Assembly: GCA_020891255.1 (NCBI GenBank)
Contig: BQFW01000008.1
Span: 248,001 to 312,000 of the forward strand
DNA from: Entomortierella parvispora E1425
Taxonomy: Eukaryota; Fungi; Mortierellomycota
Length of the DNA: 64,000 nucleotides
Direction: 5' to 3'
The number at the start of each line of letters is the position of its first letter. Position 1 is the stretch's first letter. Positions 50,975-58,853 of the stretch are shown piece by piece. The notes beneath the pieces were generated by a model, which was not told where the DNA came from, made no database searches, and saw nothing but the letters and a program-made list of their open reading frames with translations. The position numbers were made by a program, and so were the translations under genes.

Positions 50975-52224
50975 CTACTTGGACTTGTTCTCAAGGGTAT
51001 CCAAAGAGGCGCCGGCTCCCATAGGGATCAGACGCGAAGTCGTGGACTGATAGAGCTTGTAGGCTGGGTACTTTGTCGTGGTCAAGTGCTCTGTCAAAGC
51101 TGTCGAGATCTGGAACAAGACGGTCAAGCAGAGAGGTCCGACAATAGTAGGGTTGATCAGAGCATTGTAAGTTGGGTAAGCGGCGGCGACCGAGTAAAGG
51201 TAAACACCCCTAGAGTTGTCAAGAAAGAGAAAAAGTGGTAAGTGGTTAGATTTTATCATCTTTCATTGTTTCCTTCCATTTCTCAAGATCTCAACGGCGG
51301 ACCAAAATAATCAAAGAAAAACGTACCACCAAACGGTCATCTCGCCGAAAAAGTTGGGGTGGCGAGAGTATCTGAAGAGGCCCTTGGTCAAGAATCCGCG
51401 CTTAAAGTCTCCCTCCAAGGTCTTCTTTTCGGCAATAGCCTTCTTCTTGGCCTCCTGGAACTTCCACTGCTGCTGATCTGCCACAGTCTCCAAGGCGAGC
51501 CCAGCCACGACGAGTAGAGTGGCCACAGCATCGATCCAGTTCATGGGTTCCACAGTGTCGGCATAGATCGTTCTCCATGCGGCATACACAGGCGCGGTCA
51601 ACGCCACAAGCAAAAGGTTTTGGAACAGGCAGATAAAGATAATGTTGAAGGGCAACCAAAAGAGCCAGTGAATCTTGGTGCCGAGGTAGGGCCAGCGGTA
51701 GTCCTCTGCGTCCATTCCGTAACCTCCCTTGCGGTAAAAGTTGTAAGTCAATCGAACGCCCCAGATGAAGATCAAAGCAGTGGCTAAGTAGACCCGAGGA
51801 AATTGAACATAATCCTCGCCTGCAGGCCAGTAAATCTTGTCCCGGAGAGCAAAGTGGATGCTGTAGAGGATGGGCGCCAAAGACCAAATGCGATCGACCT
51901 ATTGAGTTCCGAACCAGCAGAAGGGAGCACGGTTAGTGGCGTTCATAAGTTGTTTCTCAATTGCGCAATAGGCCCCCTTGACTTTTCGTTTGTTACCCAA
52001 GAGTGTGTGCCCGTGGCCATGGAGAGGAACCAACAGATGCCACTGAAGACGAGTGAGGTTCGGAGGGCAAAGCTCAGAGGATCGGTGCGAGAATGAGCGA
52101 TGGCAATGTCGAAAAGGACGGTAGAGTCATCGCCAAAGCTGGGCCAACTCAAGGTCCTGTAGGTGACCTTGAAGATTTGGACATAGTCCGCCCAAGTGAA
52201 GAGTTCGGCCAGAGTGGAGACCAT
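50975..52224 (-). CDS. DUF1295 family membrane protein (steroid 5-alpha-reductase C-terminal-like), 3 exons
   Basis: THSW|VDRIWSL, WGVRLTYNFYRKGGY...EDYRWPYL, ETVADQQQWKFQ, GFLTKGLFRYSRHPNFFGEM..WW, STALTEHLTTTKYPAYKLYQSTTSRLIP. Confidence 0.9.
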
Positions 52225-52459
52225 AATGGAGCAAGACGGGAGGGAGAATAAAGAGATGAACTGGATGGATGAATGGATGGATGGAAGCAAGAGCAGTTGA
52301 AAAAAGAAAAAAAAAAAAAGGAAAAAAAAAAGAGCAAGGTTATGAGAGGCAGACGACCGCCCAACGGCCCTGGACCAGTAGGATGTCGTGCCACCACTCC
52401 GCGCCTGAGTGGTCAGTCGCGAATTGTTCCCAGGGCTTCCTTTTGCGTGCTCTCCGTCC

Positions 52460-52460
<1 letters not shown>

Positions 52461-52535
<75 letters not shown>

Positions 52536-52536
52536 G
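52461..52536. repeat. (TCTG)n tetranucleotide microsatellite, 19 units
   Basis: Read directly; in the divergent intergenic region between the DUF1295 and Stc1-like genes. Confidence 0.97.
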
Positions 52537-52863
52537 CCGCACGCACGGTCAGCCCTCATGGACCAGGGAAACGAGGCCATGGACGGCCTGGACCAACATG
52601 GGCGTCATGATCCATCCCGAGGAATGATGCTGGTCTCTGCACCCGATCCCTGTGTGGTGCAGTGATGTCCTGTTCGAGGCAGGGGCCACCTCCTTGTGGT
52701 CACCAAAGAAGTCGACCACAGGTTGGACTCAAATTCTTTTTAATTTGCCTTTTCCTTTCATCTCTTTCTCATTTCCACTGCTCTTTCGCATTCTTCCATT
52801 CTCCAATTCGCCGATTTCTCCACCTCACTGCAGACTCTTTCAGATCCAACATCAAATTTGCCA

Positions 52864-53518
52864 ATGTCCACCTACTCTCAAGCGTCCAGCAGTGGACGCG
52901 CTCCTTTTCCCGCGAACAACAGACAGGTTTCAAGCAGCCTTCGTATCGACGGTTCCTCTCTCATATACTGTTATGGCTGCGAGAAGAATAAGCCCAGTCG
53001 AGCCTTCAGCGAGACCCAGATCAAGAAGGCCAGCAGCAGAGCCAAGAACCACCAGATTATGTGCAAGAGCTGTAAACAATCTCCCTCGCCCTTCTGTCTT
53101 TCTCCCCTGGTGAACAAAAGCTGCTTTGCCCTGCAGAAACTGAAAAAACTAAAACGCCACCAAATTTCTGTCGCTGTTTTCTTTCAGGTATCCCCGCACA
53201 ACCCACCACACTCAAGTGCATGCGCTGTGCAAAGACGTTGCCAATGGAAAAGTTCTCAAAGGTATACAATAAGAAAGAGGCCAGCGTTCACACAAGGGCC
53301 CCCTTTTTTTCGTTGACAAAGTACGGGTGGTGATACATTGTTGCGTCTACTCATCATTGATTGTCACTTTTATTCTATGGTAGACCCAAAAGCGCAACCA
53401 AGAAAAGGCGACTTGCATGGATTGCCGCCAGTACATAGACGAGGACGACTCGGATGTGGACTTTGATCTCGAGGACGACCCTGACTTTTATGAAGGAGAC
53501 ATCACCGATGTTTTGTAA
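52864..53518 (+). CDS. Stc1-domain tandem zinc-finger protein with acidic tail, 138 aa, 3 exons (52864-53071, 53188-53261, 53384-53518)
   Basis: The spliced frame is intact, with four CxxC pairs: CYGCEKNKPSRAFSETQI...CKSC...LKCMRCAKTLPMEKFSKTQKR...ATCMDC, followed by DEDDSDVDFDLEDDPDFYEG. The ORF track misses it. Confidence 0.8.
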
Positions 53519-53856
53519 GGCGACGTAGGACGTAGCCGACATGTTGAAGTTCTATAAAGAGTTTGGTCTGACAGGGCAAGCAGCAGAGTGCTGTGGCCCA
53601 CATGCTTTATCAATCGTCATGATGTCTTATGAATTCATCCCCGCCCCACACAAAAAAGGAGAGAAAGGTCCTTGACAACCAAACGTATATGAGTGTCATG
53701 TGATAGCCAAGCCACCCGAGTCCGTCTGCGATTCTCCGCTTGCCCGTGGGCAAAGGTGGGAGAAGTAAAGTCTCTAAATTTTTTTTTCTTCTGTTTGTTC
53801 GTTTCGTTCGTCACAACCAACCCACCACTCCTTCCCTCTCCTAACTTATAGTCGCA

Positions 53857-55489
53857 ATGGCCACCAACAGCATCAAGATCTTTGCCGGAAACTCGCACGT
53901 CGAGCTGGCCAAGCTCGTCGCTCGGTAAGAGAGCTGTCTTCTCTTCCTTCATTTTCACCCGATTTCAATGATTCGCGTGCTGGGACAGATCGGGCTATTC
54001 CGAGACATTGAAATCAGTCCAGGAAAAAACAGACTTCAATGCTGCTCAAATGCAACCGCCAGTCAACTCGGAATCAACAGGATCCCTCTCTACCTGGTCT
54101 TGACGGTGGAAAGAAAATGGTTCCGAGGGGTGCCAAAAGGTGGATCACCCTCATTCGCTCTCTTTTCCTCGCAACAGCAACAGAGTTGAGCACCAGCACA
54201 AACATCAAACATCTCATCACAGGCTGTAGATATTCATTCCCTCCAGCGCGCCGCATGCACGCAGAGGGTCGCTGCTCAAGAACACAGACAACAACAAGCA
54301 GACAGACCCGCCTTCGGCGTGGACTAATCGGGAGAATGGAAAGAAGGGGGGTGCAAGCTAATATGTATCACTTTTGACTCACCATGGACACTGTTGATTT
54401 TCAATAGTCGCCTCGGAACCGAGCTGTCCAAGGTGGTCGTCCTCAAGTACTCGAACCAGGAGACTTCCGTCACCATCGGAGAGTCTGTTCGTGATGAGGA
54501 CGTGTACATTATTCAGTCTGGATGCGGCGAGATCAACGACAACCTCATGGAGCTGTTGATCATGATCAACGCCTGCAAGACTGCCTCGGCCCGTCGTATC
54601 ACCGCTATCATCCCTTGCTTCCCCTATGCCCGCCAGGACAAGAAGGACAAGTCGCGTGCCCCCATCACCGCAAAGTTGATTGCCAACATGTTGACTGTTG
54701 CCGGTGCCAACCACGTCATTACCATGGATCTTCATGCCTCCCAGATCCAGGGATTCTTCAACGTCCCCGTCGATAACCTCTACGCCGAGCCCAGCACATT
54801 GAAGTACATTGTCGAGAACATCCCCGACTACAAGAACGGTGTCATTGTTTCGCCCGATGCCGGTGGAGCCAAGAGGTAAGAACCAATGATGCATTGTATT
54901 TCATGGATCAACAAATGAGGGACTGTGCCACCGCAGCACAATCGACTTTGAGGAAGACAAACAGTCGATTCATGGAAATCATAGGATAAAGCATCCAATG
55001 ATGGATCGTCCGAGAGACCACGTTCTACTCCAGAATCTGACTGACCTGAACTCTTCGTTATCTAGAGCTACCTCGATTGCTGACCGCTTGGACTTGGATT
55101 TCGCCTTGATTCACAAGGAGCGCAAAAAGGCCAACGAGGTCTCCAGAATGGTGTTGGTCGGAGAGGTCAAGGGAAAGATTGCCATCTTGGTCGACGACAT
55201 GGCCGATACCTGCGGTACCCTCGGACTTGCTGCCAAGACCTTGGCCGAGAACGGAGCCGTCAAGGTCTATGCTATCGTCACACACGGTATTCTTTGCGGA
55301 AAGGCCGTCCAGGTGATCAACGACAGCATGTTGACCAAGGTCGTTGTCACCAACACTGTTCCCCATGAGGACAAGAAGAAGATCTGCCCCAAGTTGGACA
55401 CGATCGATATCTCTGGCACGCTCGCTGAGGCCATCCGCCGCACACACAACGGAGAGTCTGTCAGTTTCTTGTTCAACCACGCTGTTTAA
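53857..55489 (+). CDS. PRS: Ribose-phosphate pyrophosphokinase (class I PRPP synthetase), 3 exons
   Basis: [18 protein letters not shown]; [18 protein letters not shown]; [22 protein letters not shown]; [12 protein letters not shown]; [10 protein letters not shown]; [11 protein letters not shown]. Confidence 0.98.
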
Positions 55490-56389: not shown

Positions 56390-58853
56390 ATGTTTAAGCA
56401 GAGATCAGAGTCCAGCGGATTGCCGCATCATTTCAAACCAAGCGTTGGATCCTCCTCGTCCTCATTAACCGATGCGGACGACAAATACGGCAAGATTCCA
56501 AGGACTGGTCACCCTTCAAAGGTATATACCGAGCAACAGGGACAAAGATTTAGATTCGATCAAAAAAGTGGAGGAGGGCTCCCATTTTGACCTTGGACCA
56601 TAAATTTCCCACAGAGGTATTGATTTTTTTTTTCTAACTCAACGTAGACCTCGATGCGTTTCCGTCTTAAACATGGAGTCATGGCATTGGCAGTAATCGG
56701 ATTGACCTACTGGAGTCTACAACCACGTAGATCACCATCCGTTCACCTGGTACCAACAGGAGGTAAAGACAGTATACTACCCGTTTGTCATGTTATTTTT
56801 TTCAATCTTTCTTACCAAAAAAGTATCCTTCATGTTGTTTGTAGATTCCAACAGGTCCTTGCCCAACGGAGCCATCTGGGAAGAGCGCAAAGACAAAGTC
56901 AAGGCTGCATTCCAGGATTCATGGAGTGCCTACCGTCGAGATGCATGGGGCAAAGATGAATACCATCCAGTCTCCATGCAAGGATCCAACATGATCAAGA
57001 ACGGTCAAGGCTTTACCATTGTCGACTCTCTGGATACGATGTGGATCATGGGGCTTCAAAAAGAATTCAAAGAGGCCCGGGCATGGGTAGATACCGAACT
57101 CTCGTTTGATCAGGAAGGAGAAGTCAACTTGTTTGAGACGACGATCCGAGTCATGGGTGGATTGCTGAGTGCCTATCATTTGAGTCAGGATCGTCTGTTC
57201 TTGAACAAGGCCGTGGATCTGGCGGATCGATTGATGGGTGCTTTTGACACCGCCAGCGGAATTCCATATGCGAGTGTCCATTTGAAGGATGGACGGGGCG
57301 TCCCCGGACACGAACAAGGGATCAGCACCACGTCTGAAGTGTCGACGATTCAATTGGAATTCAAATATTTGAGCTTTTTGACAGGCAACGACAAATACTG
57401 GAAGGCGGCAGAGGAAGTCATCCTGAAGATGAGAGAGTTGCCGAGCTTGGATGGGCTGGTCCCAATCTTCATCAACCCCTACACTGGGGAGTTCCATGGA
57501 GCAGAGATCCGATTGGGGTCCAGAGGTGATAGCTACTACGGTAAGATGACGATCATTGTTTGAGATTGATACTTTCCTGTGCGGCGCAGAGTTTTGACGG
57601 ACTGACTGACACGTCCGTTTCTTTGTGTCTGTATTAGAGTACCTAATCAAACAGTACTTGCAGACGTCCAAACTGGAGCCTGTTTACAAGGAAATGTATG
57701 ACTATGCCATATCAGGAGTCAAGAAGCATCTCATTGGCAGAACATACCCAAACAATCTTCTCTATGTGGGTGAGATCTCGATGCACAACCCTCAGGATCT
57801 CAAGCCCAAGATGGATCATTTGGTTTGTTTCTTGGGCGGGACCATGGCGCTCTCGTCGACTGAAGGACACCCTATCGACAATGCCACATTGACCCGGTCT
57901 CAATTCTCTGAGGTCGAGGAAGAGGATTTCAAGGTTGGAGAGGAACTGACAAAGTCATGCTACGAGATGTACCGACAAACCGAGACGGGATTGGCATCAG
58001 AGATTGTGTACTGGGTCCAGGATGAGGATCAGATCAAGAACCGAAAGGTGCCAGAGTACTTTGATGGCTCGGATTTCATCATCCATAACCGCGATGGTCA
58101 TAACTGGCTTCGACCCGAGACGGTGGAAAGTTTGTTTTACCTCTGGCAATTGACCCGGGATGAAAAATATCGGTAAGAACTGGGATCTCTGTCAAAATGT
58201 TCTCAAATGTTGAGGATAAAGAAAAAAGTGGCCCATTGACTTTTTTTTATATTTATTTCACTCGAAACCGTTGTAATAGGGAATGGGGCTGGAAGATCTT
58301 TGAGGCCATTGAAAAGTACAGCAAGGTCGAGACAGGCGGATACAGTTCAATCCACGATATTCGTCAAAAGTCAAACATTCAGTTTTCGGACAAAATGGAG
58401 ACGTTCTATTTGGCCGAGACTCTCAAATACCTCTATTTGCTCTTTGCTCCTGTCGACACTGTGCCCTTGGACAAGTTTGTATTCAACACTGAGGCACATC
58501 CTCTGCCGATATTTGTCCCTCCACGGTCCATGATTGCGAGATCCAAGGCCTCCACGGCGACAGCCGATGCAGAAAAATCGGTGCCTGATCTTCCCAACGC
58601 TGTGCCTGAGGCCGCCGTTGCAGAAGGTGTGGCAGCCATGGGATCTGAAGATTTGTTCAAAGAGCCGGAGGCGGCGACACCCGAGACAGAAGAAGCGGTA
58701 GAGACAGAGATGGATCCAGCTGCGGTGGCAGAAGAAGAAACTGTAGAGTTTCCAGTGGATGATATTGCGGTGCCAGAGTCCGACATTGTGCCCGAGGTCG
58801 AGGTCGACTATGATGATGAATCCATCGAGGCTTCTGCAGAAGAGCTAGACTAG
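56390..58853 (+). CDS. MNS1: ER alpha-1,2-mannosidase, glycoside hydrolase family 47, 5 exons
   Basis: Type II anchor LKHGVMALAVIGLTYWSL; AWGKDEYHPVS; VNLFETTIRVMGGLLSAY; LGSRGDSYY|EYLIKQ; MDHLVCFLGG; LRPETVES; DKMETFYLAETLKYLYLLF; FNTEAHPLP. The start is uncertain because the frame is open upstream without an ATG. Confidence 0.95.

What the first reader, a model, noticed from the sequence alone, without database searches (positions are those of the whole stretch)
52864..53518. Stc1-like gene: candidate RNAi-to-heterochromatin adaptor in an early-diverging fungus
Seen: an intact 138-aa, 3-exon gene missed by the ORF track. It has four CxxC pairs with the repeated Cx2C-x3-(K/L)P-x3-FS-x2-Q spacing and a strongly acidic tail with an aromatic patch (DPDFYEG). 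Known: S. pombe Stc1 uses a tandem zinc-finger domain to bind Argonaute and an acidic disordered C-terminus to recruit the Clr4/CLRC H3K9 methyltransferase complex. Inference: both halves of that architecture are present, implying a possible siRNA-guided H3K9me pathway here. As I recall, RNAi and H3K9me were reported to act largely independently in Mucorales, so either a conserved bridge or a repurposed Stc1 would be new.
Basis: partly seen in the sequence, partly recalled or inferred. Interest (0 to 1): 0.72.

Follow-up and report, generated by a model that had tools for sequence, protein, structure and literature searches.

The report
Annotated Stc1-family zinc-finger gene
This is a real, conserved small gene of the soil fungus Entomortierella parvispora that belongs to the Stc1 zinc-finger family; it is already in public databases and the family was already reported in this fungal group, and whether it links RNA interference to chromatin silencing here is untested.

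Summary
Window 52864-53518 (+) carries a 3-exon gene for a 138-aa protein with four CxxC pairs and a 30-residue acidic tail. It is identical to GenBank EMPS_05754 of Entomortierella parvispora (Mortierellomycota, not Mucorales), which UniRef names 'Stc1 domain-containing protein'.

Family membership is firm:
- Pfam Stc1 scores 60.9 bits against a cut-off of 24.8.
- The only solved structure matched, by sequence and by fold, is the fission-yeast Stc1 zinc-finger domain (2LUY).
- The gene is single-copy, both intron positions and the gene neighbourhood are conserved, and there are orthologues across Mortierellomycota, Glomeromycota and Mucoromycotina.
- The genome also encodes Argonautes, Dicers, an RdRP, a chromodomain-bearing Clr4-type enzyme and two HP1-like proteins.

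The novelty claim fails. A Rhizopus homologue was in the 2010 Stc1 paper, and a 2023 PNAS paper states that Stc1 homologues occur in Mucoromycota.

The bridge function is unproven. The two residues whose mutation breaks Ago1 binding in fission yeast (K100, R116) are L87 and T104 here. T104 is a Mortierellomycota-specific change: the sister groups keep R.

Minor new details are a conserved N-terminal motif and a conserved C-terminal end. Overall an ordinary, already annotated family member with an open functional question.

The parts
52864..53071 (+). Exon 1: Met1 to Ser69 plus the first base of the Cys70 codon. Holds the disordered N-terminal arm and most of zinc finger 1.
   Evidence: Pfam Stc1 on this exon alone: 18.2 bits, profile positions 2-39. 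Identical to residues 1-69 of P0001.
52894..52926 (+). Conserved N-terminal motif GRAPFPANNRQ (residues 11-21). The family-wide core is [AS]-N-x-Q.
   Evidence: R12, A13, P14, P16, A17, N18, N19, R20 and Q21 are invariant in 10 Mortierellomycota. The A/S-N-x-Q core is kept in Glomeromycota and Mucoromycotina. pLDDT about 44-52, so predicted disordered.
53072..53187 (+). Intron 1 (116 nt, GT..AG, phase 1, splits the Cys70 codon).
   Evidence: Same position in the Linnemannia hyalina orthologue; 28% identity over all columns with 61 gap columns.
53188..53261 (+). Exon 2: the rest of Cys70, then Ile71 to Lys94. Holds the start of zinc finger 2.
   Evidence: Pfam Stc1 on this exon alone: 21.4 bits, profile positions 46-68.
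53238..53240 (+). Codon of Leu87, the position equivalent to S. pombe Stc1 K100 (K100A impairs Ago1 association).
   Evidence: Ungapped alignments to 2LUY anchored on the CxxC pairs; the chain offset of 29 was derived from C83 and C93. This position is L in 21 of 26 Mortierellomycota, K or M in Glomeromycota, and K13/Q7/M4 in Mucoromycotina.
53262..53383 (+). Intron 2 (122 nt, GT..AG, phase 0).
   Evidence: Same position in Linnemannia hyalina; 43% identity over all columns.
53384..53518 (+). Exon 3: Thr95 to Leu138 plus the TAA stop. Holds the last CxxC pair and the acidic tail.
   Evidence: The clade profile matches this stretch (profile positions 98-142) with E 3.7e-15.
53411..53413 (+). 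Codon of Thr104, the position equivalent to S. pombe Stc1 R116 (R116A abolishes Ago1 association and siRNAs).
   Evidence: It lies directly before the invariant Cys105, as R116 lies before its Cys. This position is T in 24 of 26 Mortierellomycota, R in 12 of 13 Glomeromycota and R in 24 of 24 Mucoromycotina.
52969..53425 (+). Tandem Cys4 zinc-finger (Stc1) domain, residues 36-108, spanning both introns.
   Evidence: Pfam PF12898: 60.9 bits, residues 36-109 on profile positions 2-83 of 84. AF2 pLDDT 78-88 over residues 31-110. The only significant Foldseek PDB hit is 2LUY. All eight Cys are invariant in 64 family members.
53426..53515 (+). Acidic disordered tail, residues 109-138, with a conserved DDS(D/E) serine (Ser117), the aromatic patch DPDFY, and the C-terminal end D-V-L.
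   Evidence: 14 Asp/Glu in 30 residues. pLDDT 56-67. D116 and L138 are invariant and D126 and D136 nearly invariant in 33 sequences. S117 is invariant in the 10 Mortierellomycota. The end reads ETWDD[IV]L in Glomeromycota and part of Mucoromycotina, and GDIxD[IV]L in Mortierellomycota.

Best explanation
Shown: this is EMPS_05754, the single-copy Stc1-family gene of Entomortierella parvispora. The product has three parts. The centre is a tandem Cys4 zinc-finger module with the fold of fission-yeast Stc1. It is flanked by a disordered N-terminal arm carrying a conserved GRAPxPA[NH]NRQ motif and by a 30-residue acidic tail with a conserved serine and a conserved hydrophobic C-terminal end.

Inferred mechanism, about 40% likely: it is a small nuclear adaptor that works like Stc1. 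The zinc fingers would dock on a targeting factor, with one of the five or six Argonautes as the leading candidate. The acidic tail would recruit or activate the Clr4-type H3K9 methyltransferase complex. It would act mainly when H3K9 methylation is first established at siRNA-producing repeats, not in its maintenance.

Identity, fold, conservation and the presence of partner classes are shown. Every binding step and the chromatin outcome are inferred by homology.
For: - Family and fold: Pfam Stc1 60.9 bits against a 24.8 cut-off. 2LUY (S. pombe Stc1) is the only PDB sequence hit and the only significant fold hit.
- Layout: structured core with disordered tails, as described for Stc1 (10.1101/271270 citing He et al. 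2013).
- One locus in the genome, with both Pfam and a clade profile.
- Purifying selection, conserved introns and conserved synteny.
- Orthologues of 117-152 aa in 64 Mucoromycota sensu lato proteins, with conserved short motifs at both ends, as expected of a two-sided adaptor.
- Partner classes in the same genome: Piwi at five or six loci, one with PAZ-MID-PIWI in a single exon; Dicer_dimer at 3-4 loci; RdRP; one chromo + Pre-SET + SET gene; two HP1-like genes; three Rse1/DDB1/Rik1-type propeller loci.
- Literature: Stc1 is needed for establishment rather than maintenance (PMC2875855). [quoted passage not shown]
Against: - The two S. pombe residues whose mutation uncouples Stc1 from Ago1 are not kept: K100 corresponds to L87 and R116 to T104. 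The R-to-T change is specific to Mortierellomycota.
- The RITS-specific partners Chp1 and Tas3 are reported absent outside S. pombe (PMC9963178).
- RNAi and H3K9me act independently in Mucor (PMC9963178).
- No RFTS (Raf2-type) domain was found in the genome, although that search was uninformative.
- The tail is only 30 residues, whereas S. pombe Stc1 is a 25-kDa protein with a much longer region after residue 121 (PMC2875855).
- The family also occurs in algae (PMC2875855), so the domain alone does not imply RNAi-chromatin coupling.
- No expression or interaction data were obtained here.
Confidence: 0.4

Rival explanations
1. Repurposed Stc1: the protein still recruits or activates the Clr4 complex through its acidic tail, but no longer docks on Argonaute. 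Targeting would come from another factor bound by the zinc fingers or by the Mortierellomycota-specific N-terminal GRAPxPA[NH]NRQ motif. H3K9 methylation would then be RNAi-independent, as in Mucor.
For: L87 and T104 replace the Ago1-binding K100 and R116, while the sister clades keep R and often K. The N-terminal motif is expanded and invariant only in Mortierellomycota. RNAi and heterochromatin act independently in Mucorales (PMC9963178). Tethered Stc1 recruits CLRC without RNAi, and Stc1 is needed even for tethered Clr4 (PMC2875855).
Against: Two residues do not define an interface, and the Argonaute surface may have changed with them. All eight Cys and most of the finger surface motif (KP/LP, FS, Q) are conserved. 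No alternative partner is known.
Confidence: 0.3
2. It is a generic small zinc-finger adaptor unrelated to heterochromatin. The Stc1 domain would be a widespread protein-binding module, and this family would serve another process (for example a chaperone-like or signalling role for its acidic tail). Only the fission-yeast member would be wired to RNAi and CLRC.
For: The family extends to algae and many fungi (PMC2875855). No Stc1-domain protein other than S. pombe Stc1 was found characterised in the paper library. Identity to S. pombe Stc1 is only about 28% and confined to the fingers. Similarity of the tail to S. pombe could not be checked.
Against: The two-part layout (fingers plus acidic disordered tail) is the same as in Stc1. 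The gene is single-copy, as expected of an orthologue. It is retained throughout a group that keeps both RNAi and Clr4 (PMC9963178).
Confidence: 0.27
3. It is not a functional gene: a chance open frame or a decaying relic wrongly joined into a gene model.
For: No RNA-seq run was listed for this stretch. Intron 1 is open in the frame of exon 1 (ORF 52858-53316), so the splice model is not forced by stop codons there.
Against: Pfam E 1.8e-16 needs all three exons joined as modelled. Intron positions, synteny and length are conserved across genera. Exons are far better conserved than introns, with many synonymous changes. More than 60 orthologues exist.
Confidence: 0.02

Closest known systems
Schizosaccharomyces pombe Stc1 (SPBP8B7.28c; PDB 2LUY; Bayne et al. 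2010, PMC2875855)
   Same: Same Pfam family (PF12898). Same eight-Cys tandem zinc-finger fold, and the only PDB match by sequence and by structure. Same order of structured fingers followed by an acidic disordered C-terminal region. Single copy in a genome that has Argonaute, Dicer, RdRP, a chromodomain Clr4 and HP1.
   Different: About 28% identity, limited to the fingers. K100 and R116 (Ago1 association) are L87 and T104 here. The protein is 138 aa against a 25-kDa protein, and the tail is only 30 residues. It has an N-terminal conserved motif; whether S. pombe has one could not be checked, because only the finger domain of S. pombe Stc1 was available. Chp1 and Tas3 are reported absent from this fungal group (PMC9963178). 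No functional data.
Stc1 homologues of Mucorales and other Mucoromycota (PMC9963178, 2023; PMC12863538, 2026; Rhizopus EST in PMC2875855 Fig. S5)
   Same: Direct orthologues: same length class (117-152 aa), same fingers, the [AS]-N-x-Q N-terminal core, and an acidic tail with a conserved serine. Equally uncharacterised experimentally.
   Different: Mucoromycotina and Glomeromycota keep Arg at the R116-equivalent position and often Lys at the K100-equivalent position, and many end in ETWDD[IV]L. Mortierellomycota have Thr and Leu there, an expanded GRAPxPA[NH]NRQ motif, and the end GDIxD[IV]L.
Animal Gtsf1/Asterix (tandem CHHC zinc fingers plus acidic tail, a PIWI cofactor)
   Same: [quoted passage not shown] The parallel is drawn in 10.1101/271270 and PMC8490990.
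   Different: Not homologous: CHHC fingers rather than Cys4, a different fold family and a different lineage. This is an analogy only.
LIM domains
   Same: Two consecutive zinc-binding modules used for protein-protein contacts. Bayne et al. 2010 found profile-profile similarity. LIM structures appear among the weak fold hits (ranks 5, 9 and 11).
   Different: LIM matches are not significant here (E above 0.4, probability 0.25 or less), and Pfam LIM does not match. The 2LUY entry describes a tandem zinc-finger domain of its own kind.

Membership tests
Stc1 domain family (Pfam PF12898) | Score above the Pfam gathering threshold over the whole domain | tested here: met
   60.9 bits, E 1.8e-16, profile positions 2-83 of 84, cut-off 24.8. 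Exon by exon: 18.2 and 21.4 bits.
Stc1 domain family (Pfam PF12898) | Eight zinc-binding cysteines in four CxxC pairs forming two tandem fingers | tested here: met
   C36/39, C67/70, C80/83 and C105/108. All are invariant in 64 relatives and align to the Cys pairs of 2LUY.
Stc1 domain family (Pfam PF12898) | Fold of the solved Stc1 tandem zinc-finger domain | tested here: met
   The AF2 model core has pLDDT 78-88. In Foldseek against the PDB, 2LUY is the only hit with E below 0.001 (E 1.5e-4, probability 1.00, TM 0.42 by target, 86 columns). The TM-score is modest, which may reflect loosely oriented fingers in an NMR model.
Functional orthologue of S. pombe Stc1 (Ago1-CLRC bridge) | One-to-one relationship: the only Stc1-type gene in the genome, with Stc1 as the best characterised match | tested here: met
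   Only this locus matches PF12898 or the clade profile in the 38.9-Mb genome. 2LUY is the sole PDB hit. The reverse search in the S. pombe proteome was not possible with these tools.
Functional orthologue of S. pombe Stc1 (Ago1-CLRC bridge) | Conservation of K100 and R116, whose mutation abolishes association with Ago1 but not with CLRC (PMC2875855) | tested here: not met
   K100 corresponds to L87 and R116 to T104 in ungapped alignment next to invariant Cys. T in 24 of 26 and L in 21 of 26 Mortierellomycota; R in 36 of 37 sister-clade sequences.
Functional orthologue of S. pombe Stc1 (Ago1-CLRC bridge) | Disordered acidic C-terminal region that binds CLRC | tested here: inconclusive
   An acidic tail (14 D/E in 30 residues) with low pLDDT is present and conserved. 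It is much shorter than in S. pombe. It could not be aligned to the S. pombe tail, because full-length S. pombe Stc1 was not obtainable from the tools. Binding was not tested.
Functional orthologue of S. pombe Stc1 (Ago1-CLRC bridge) | Physical association with Argonaute and with Clr4, Rik1, Cul4, Raf1 or Raf2 | not testable with these tools
   This needs co-purification or pull-down experiments. See Tried and rejected for the single modelling attempt, which gave no verdict.
Functional orthologue of S. pombe Stc1 (Ago1-CLRC bridge) | Co-occurrence with RNAi and the H3K9 methylation machinery in the same genome | tested here: met
   Piwi at five or six loci, with PAZ, L2, MID and Piwi in L003. 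Dicer_dimer at 3-4 loci. RdRP. Chromo + Pre-SET + SET in one frame on C2. Two chromo + chromo-shadow genes. Three Rse1/DDB1/Rik1-type propellers, not resolved to Rik1. RFTS (Raf2): no hit, uninformative. Raf1, Chp1 and Tas3 were not searched here.
Functional orthologue of S. pombe Stc1 (Ago1-CLRC bridge) | Requirement for RNAi-directed establishment of H3K9 methylation | not testable with these tools
   This needs a mutant with H3K9me ChIP and small-RNA sequencing. No such experiment on any Mucoromycota Stc1 homologue was found in the paper library.

The most novel reading that the evidence does not exclude
In Mortierellomycota the Stc1 orthologue has given up the ancestral Argonaute contact: R116 became T and K100 became L, both fixed across the phylum. 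It gained an invariant N-terminal GRAPxPA[NH]NRQ docking motif instead. It would then recruit the Clr4 complex to a different, still unknown targeting factor. That would be a natural rewiring of the RNAi-to-heterochromatin adaptor, comparable side by side with sister clades that keep the ancestral residues.
Probability: 0.15. Interest if true: 0.55.

Novelty: already known. Interest (0 to 1): 0.25.

Why it matters
How small RNAs are coupled to H3K9 methylation outside fission yeast is an open question. In Mucoromycota the RITS subunits Chp1 and Tas3 are missing while Stc1, Clr4 and RNAi persist. A working Stc1 bridge would give these fungi a minimal coupling device. A repurposed one would show how the adaptor is rewired. 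This locus adds nothing that makes the question newly testable. The gene is annotated, the family's presence in the group is published, and the tractable models are Mucor and Mortierella alpina rather than this species. The useful by-products are the phylum-specific loss of the two Ago1-binding residues and the conserved terminal motifs, which suggest concrete point mutants.

Tried and rejected
- RNA evidence: the look-up of sequencing runs listed no RNA run for window 52400-54400, so read laying was not used and splicing is not confirmed by reads.
- Complex modelling: P0001 against the 652-aa PAZ-MID-PIWI open frame of the best Argonaute locus (L003:1393-3348:-) returned 'no answer' (score 0.00, chains folded without alignments). 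This counts neither for nor against binding.
- The look-up of encoding contigs holds no record of P0001 itself; the Linnemannia hyalina orthologue was used for synteny instead.
- He et al. 2013 (the Stc1 structure paper) could not be read: the DOI and a PMC id recalled from memory are not held. Its content is cited only through 10.1101/271270 and the title of entry 2LUY.
- The PNAS 2023 supplements are not held, so I could not check whether a Mortierellomycota species is in its Fig. 1 matrix.
- The RFTS/Raf2 search (PF12047) found nothing, but nothing rang in the control genomes either, so it is uninformative.
- The three Rse1/DDB1-type propeller loci were not resolved into Rik1, DDB1 and SF3b3.
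- The large representative search was not run. The operators flagged its cost, and Pfam plus the word search had already placed the protein.
- As a result full-length S. pombe Stc1 and Dikarya or algal members were not retrieved. The tail and the N-terminal motif could not be compared beyond Mucoromycota sensu lato.
- P0078 (215 aa) looked by length like S. pombe Stc1 but is a different, unnamed ENA protein.
- Earlier scan notes held nothing bearing on this locus.
- The LIM-domain and zf-CHY readings were rejected: both are sub-threshold or non-significant.

Full report
**Observation.** Window 52864-53518 on the + strand reads as a three-exon gene.
- Exon 1 is 52864-53071 and intron 1 is 53072-53187 (GT..AG, splitting a Cys codon as T|GT).
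- Exon 2 is 53188-53261 and intron 2 is 53262-53383 (GT..AG).
- Exon 3 is 53384-53518 and ends in TAA.
- This gives 69 + 1 + 24 + 44 = 138 residues.

I searched them by reference. A word search with the open frame 52864-53313, scored on residues 1-69, returned P0001. This is 'hypothetical protein EMPS_05754 [Entomortierella parvispora]', 138 aa, and UniRef names it 'Stc1 domain-containing protein'. Its sequence equals exon 1 + Cys + exon 2 + exon 3, so it served as the reference for the joined product.

The four CxxC pairs sit at C36/39, C67/70, C80/83 and C105/108. So is the acidic tail, with 14 D/E in the last 30 residues, including DPDFYEG. The organism is Mortierellomycota, not Mucorales, and the gene is already annotated.

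**Is the gene real?** No RNA run was listed, so the support is comparative.
- The Linnemannia hyalina orthologue (P0015, locus L010) has introns at exactly the same two positions.
- Exons are 68-70% identical, with no gaps in exons 2 and 3. The introns are 28% and 43% identical over all columns and full of indels.
- 44 of 93 differing codons differ only synonymously.
- The neighbourhood is the same in both genera: DUF1295 (-), Stc1 (+), ribose-phosphate pyrophosphokinase (+), GH47 (+).
- Pfam and a clade-specific profile each find only this locus in the 38.9-Mb genome.

**What is it?**
- Pfam Stc1 (PF12898) matches P0001 at 60.9 bits, E 1.8e-16, over profile positions 2-83 of 84. The cut-off is 24.8. 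Exons 1 and 2 alone give 18.2 and 21.4 bits.
- Against all PDB sequences the only meaningful hit is 2LUY, the S. pombe protein P8B7.28c, which is Stc1. E is 8.8e-6 with the single sequence and 3.4e-12 with a 33-sequence profile.
- An AlphaFold2 model built on that alignment has a confident core, with block pLDDT 78-88 over residues 31-110. The N-terminal 30 residues score 44-52 and the tail 56-67.
- Foldseek against the PDB gives one significant match, 2LUY, 'tandem zinc finger domain of fission yeast Stc1' (E 1.5e-4, probability 1.00). LIM domains follow only at E above 0.4.

Membership in the Stc1 domain family is therefore established.

**Relatives.** Two profile word searches found full-length members of 117-152 aa in three groups, nearly all carrying PF12898. 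Several genomes hold two or three copies (Geosiphon, Funneliformis, Jimgerdemannia).
- Essentially every sequenced Mortierellomycota genus.
- Glomeromycota.
- Mucoromycotina, including Mucor, Rhizopus, Lichtheimia, Umbelopsis and Jimgerdemannia.

An alignment of 64 of them shows three points.
- All eight Cys and the KP/FS/Q finger motifs are invariant or nearly so.
- There is a short N-terminal [AS]-N-x-Q motif. In Mortierellomycota it is expanded to an almost invariant GRAPxPA[NH]NRQ.
- The acidic tail carries a conserved serine in a DDS(D/E) context, which by general knowledge resembles a casein-kinase-2 site; this was not tested. The conserved C-terminal end reads ETWDD[IV]L in Glomeromycota and part of Mucoromycotina, and GDIxD[IV]L in Mortierellomycota.

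Conserved short motifs in both disordered ends fit a two-sided adaptor.

**The functional residues.** Bayne et al. 2010 (PMC2875855) showed that K100A and R116A leave Stc1 stable and able to recruit CLRC but break its association with Ago1.
- The cysteines C83 and C93 named there fix the offset between 2LUY chain numbering and protein numbering at 29. It is the only Cys pair ten residues apart, and chain positions 71 and 87 are indeed K and R.
- In both HMMER alignments these positions align without gaps, four residues after and one residue before invariant cysteines. They correspond to L87 and T104 of the E. parvispora protein.
- At position 104, 24 of 26 Mortierellomycota have T. By contrast 12 of 13 Glomeromycota and 24 of 24 Mucoromycotina have R.
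- At position 87, 21 of 26 Mortierellomycota have L. The sister clades have K, M or Q.

The Ago1-binding residues therefore look ancestral in the wider group and were replaced specifically in the phylum of this genome. This does not disprove Argonaute binding, since interfaces co-evolve. It is, however, a defining-feature test that is not met.

**Partners in the genome** (six-frame family searches of the window's own assembly).
- Piwi is found at five or six loci. The best locus has PAZ, L2, MID and Piwi in one 652-aa exon.
- Dicer_dimer is found at three to four loci and RdRP at one locus.
- One gene has chromo + Pre-SET + SET in a single open frame at C2:2057961-2058587 and beyond. This is a chromodomain-bearing Clr4 type, as PMC9963178 describes for early-diverging fungi.
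- Two genes have chromo + chromo-shadow domains and are HP1-like.
- Three Rse1/DDB1/Rik1-type propeller loci were found but not resolved.
- An RFTS domain (Raf2) was not found, but that search was uninformative.

**Literature.** PMC9963178 (PNAS 2023) reports that heterochromatin and RNAi act independently in Mucorales. [quoted passage not shown]
- PMC12863538 (2026) lists Stc1, Clr4, Rik1, Cul4 and Raf1 as conserved in four Mucor species and discusses a partial or context-dependent coupling.
- The alignment in the original Stc1 paper already held a Rhizopus oryzae EST and algal members.
- No paper in the library links Mortierella with H3K9 and RNAi, and none characterises another Stc1-domain protein.

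Presence of the gene is therefore known. Its function in any early-diverging fungus is not.

**Mechanism.**
- Most likely, at about 40%, the protein works like Stc1. Its fingers would dock on a targeting factor, probably an Argonaute. Its acidic tail would bring or activate the Clr4 complex at the establishment step. This is compatible with RNAi being dispensable for maintenance in Mucor.
- Nearly as likely, at about 30%, it keeps the Clr4-complex side but has changed its targeting partner in Mortierellomycota. The L87/T104 replacements and the phylum-specific N-terminal motif point this way.
- A role unrelated to heterochromatin gets about 27%. The domain is widespread, and only one member has ever been studied.
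- A non-gene is excluded by the comparative data.

**Verdict.** Orthology to the published Mucoromycota Stc1 homologues is clear. Functional equivalence to S. pombe Stc1 is plausible but unproven, with one defining feature not met. The locus is an ordinary, already annotated member of a known family. The small additions are the phylum-specific residue changes and the terminal motifs.

The large representative search was not run, for reasons of cost and because the protein was not left open. The single complex-modelling job gave no verdict and appears only under Tried and rejected.

Noticed in passing
window 52456-52536: A (GTCT)20 microsatellite (98% matches) lies about 330 bp upstream of the start codon, between the divergently oriented DUF1295 gene and the Stc1-family gene. 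An A-rich run lies at 52300-52331.
   Followed up: partly
window 52858-53316: Intron 1 has no stop in the frame of exon 1: a 152-aa ORF runs through it and on into exon 2 out of frame. Retention of intron 1 would yield a protein with the first finger only. No reads were available to see whether this happens.
   Followed up: no
G000 C1:982-1042 kb, C2:2180-2224 kb, C11:374-409 kb, C13:1971-2017 kb, C14:2009-2048 kb and others: More than 130 chromodomain matches occur in the genome. Many are identical in score (36.3 bits) and clustered in a few tens of kilobases per contig, typical of chromodomain-bearing Ty3/Gypsy-type elements piled up in repeat-rich regions. These clusters are the obvious places to look for H3K9me and siRNAs.
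   Followed up: no
G000 C3:290064-291213 (+) and C3:304907-306077 (-): Two Piwi-domain loci about 14 kb apart in opposite orientation both show several in-frame stops inside the Piwi match (7 and 4). These may be introns or decay.
   Followed up: no
G000 C2:2057961-2058587 (locus L009): The single Pre-SET/SET gene has a chromodomain match in the same open frame upstream of Pre-SET. It is therefore a chromodomain-bearing Clr4/KMT1 type.
   Followed up: partly
window 53857-55489 and 56790-57563: The downstream neighbours are a ribose-phosphate pyrophosphokinase gene (Pribosyltran_N, Pribosyl_synth) and a GH47 mannosidase gene. The upstream neighbour on the minus strand is a DUF1295 gene (51314-51880). 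The order is the same as in Linnemannia hyalina.
   Followed up: yes
P0035: A Glomeromycota-type family member is filed in UniRef under the plant Anthurium amnicola as 'Meiotic chromosome segregation protein P8B7.28c'. It is probably a mycorrhizal-fungus transcript in a plant transcriptome.
   Followed up: no
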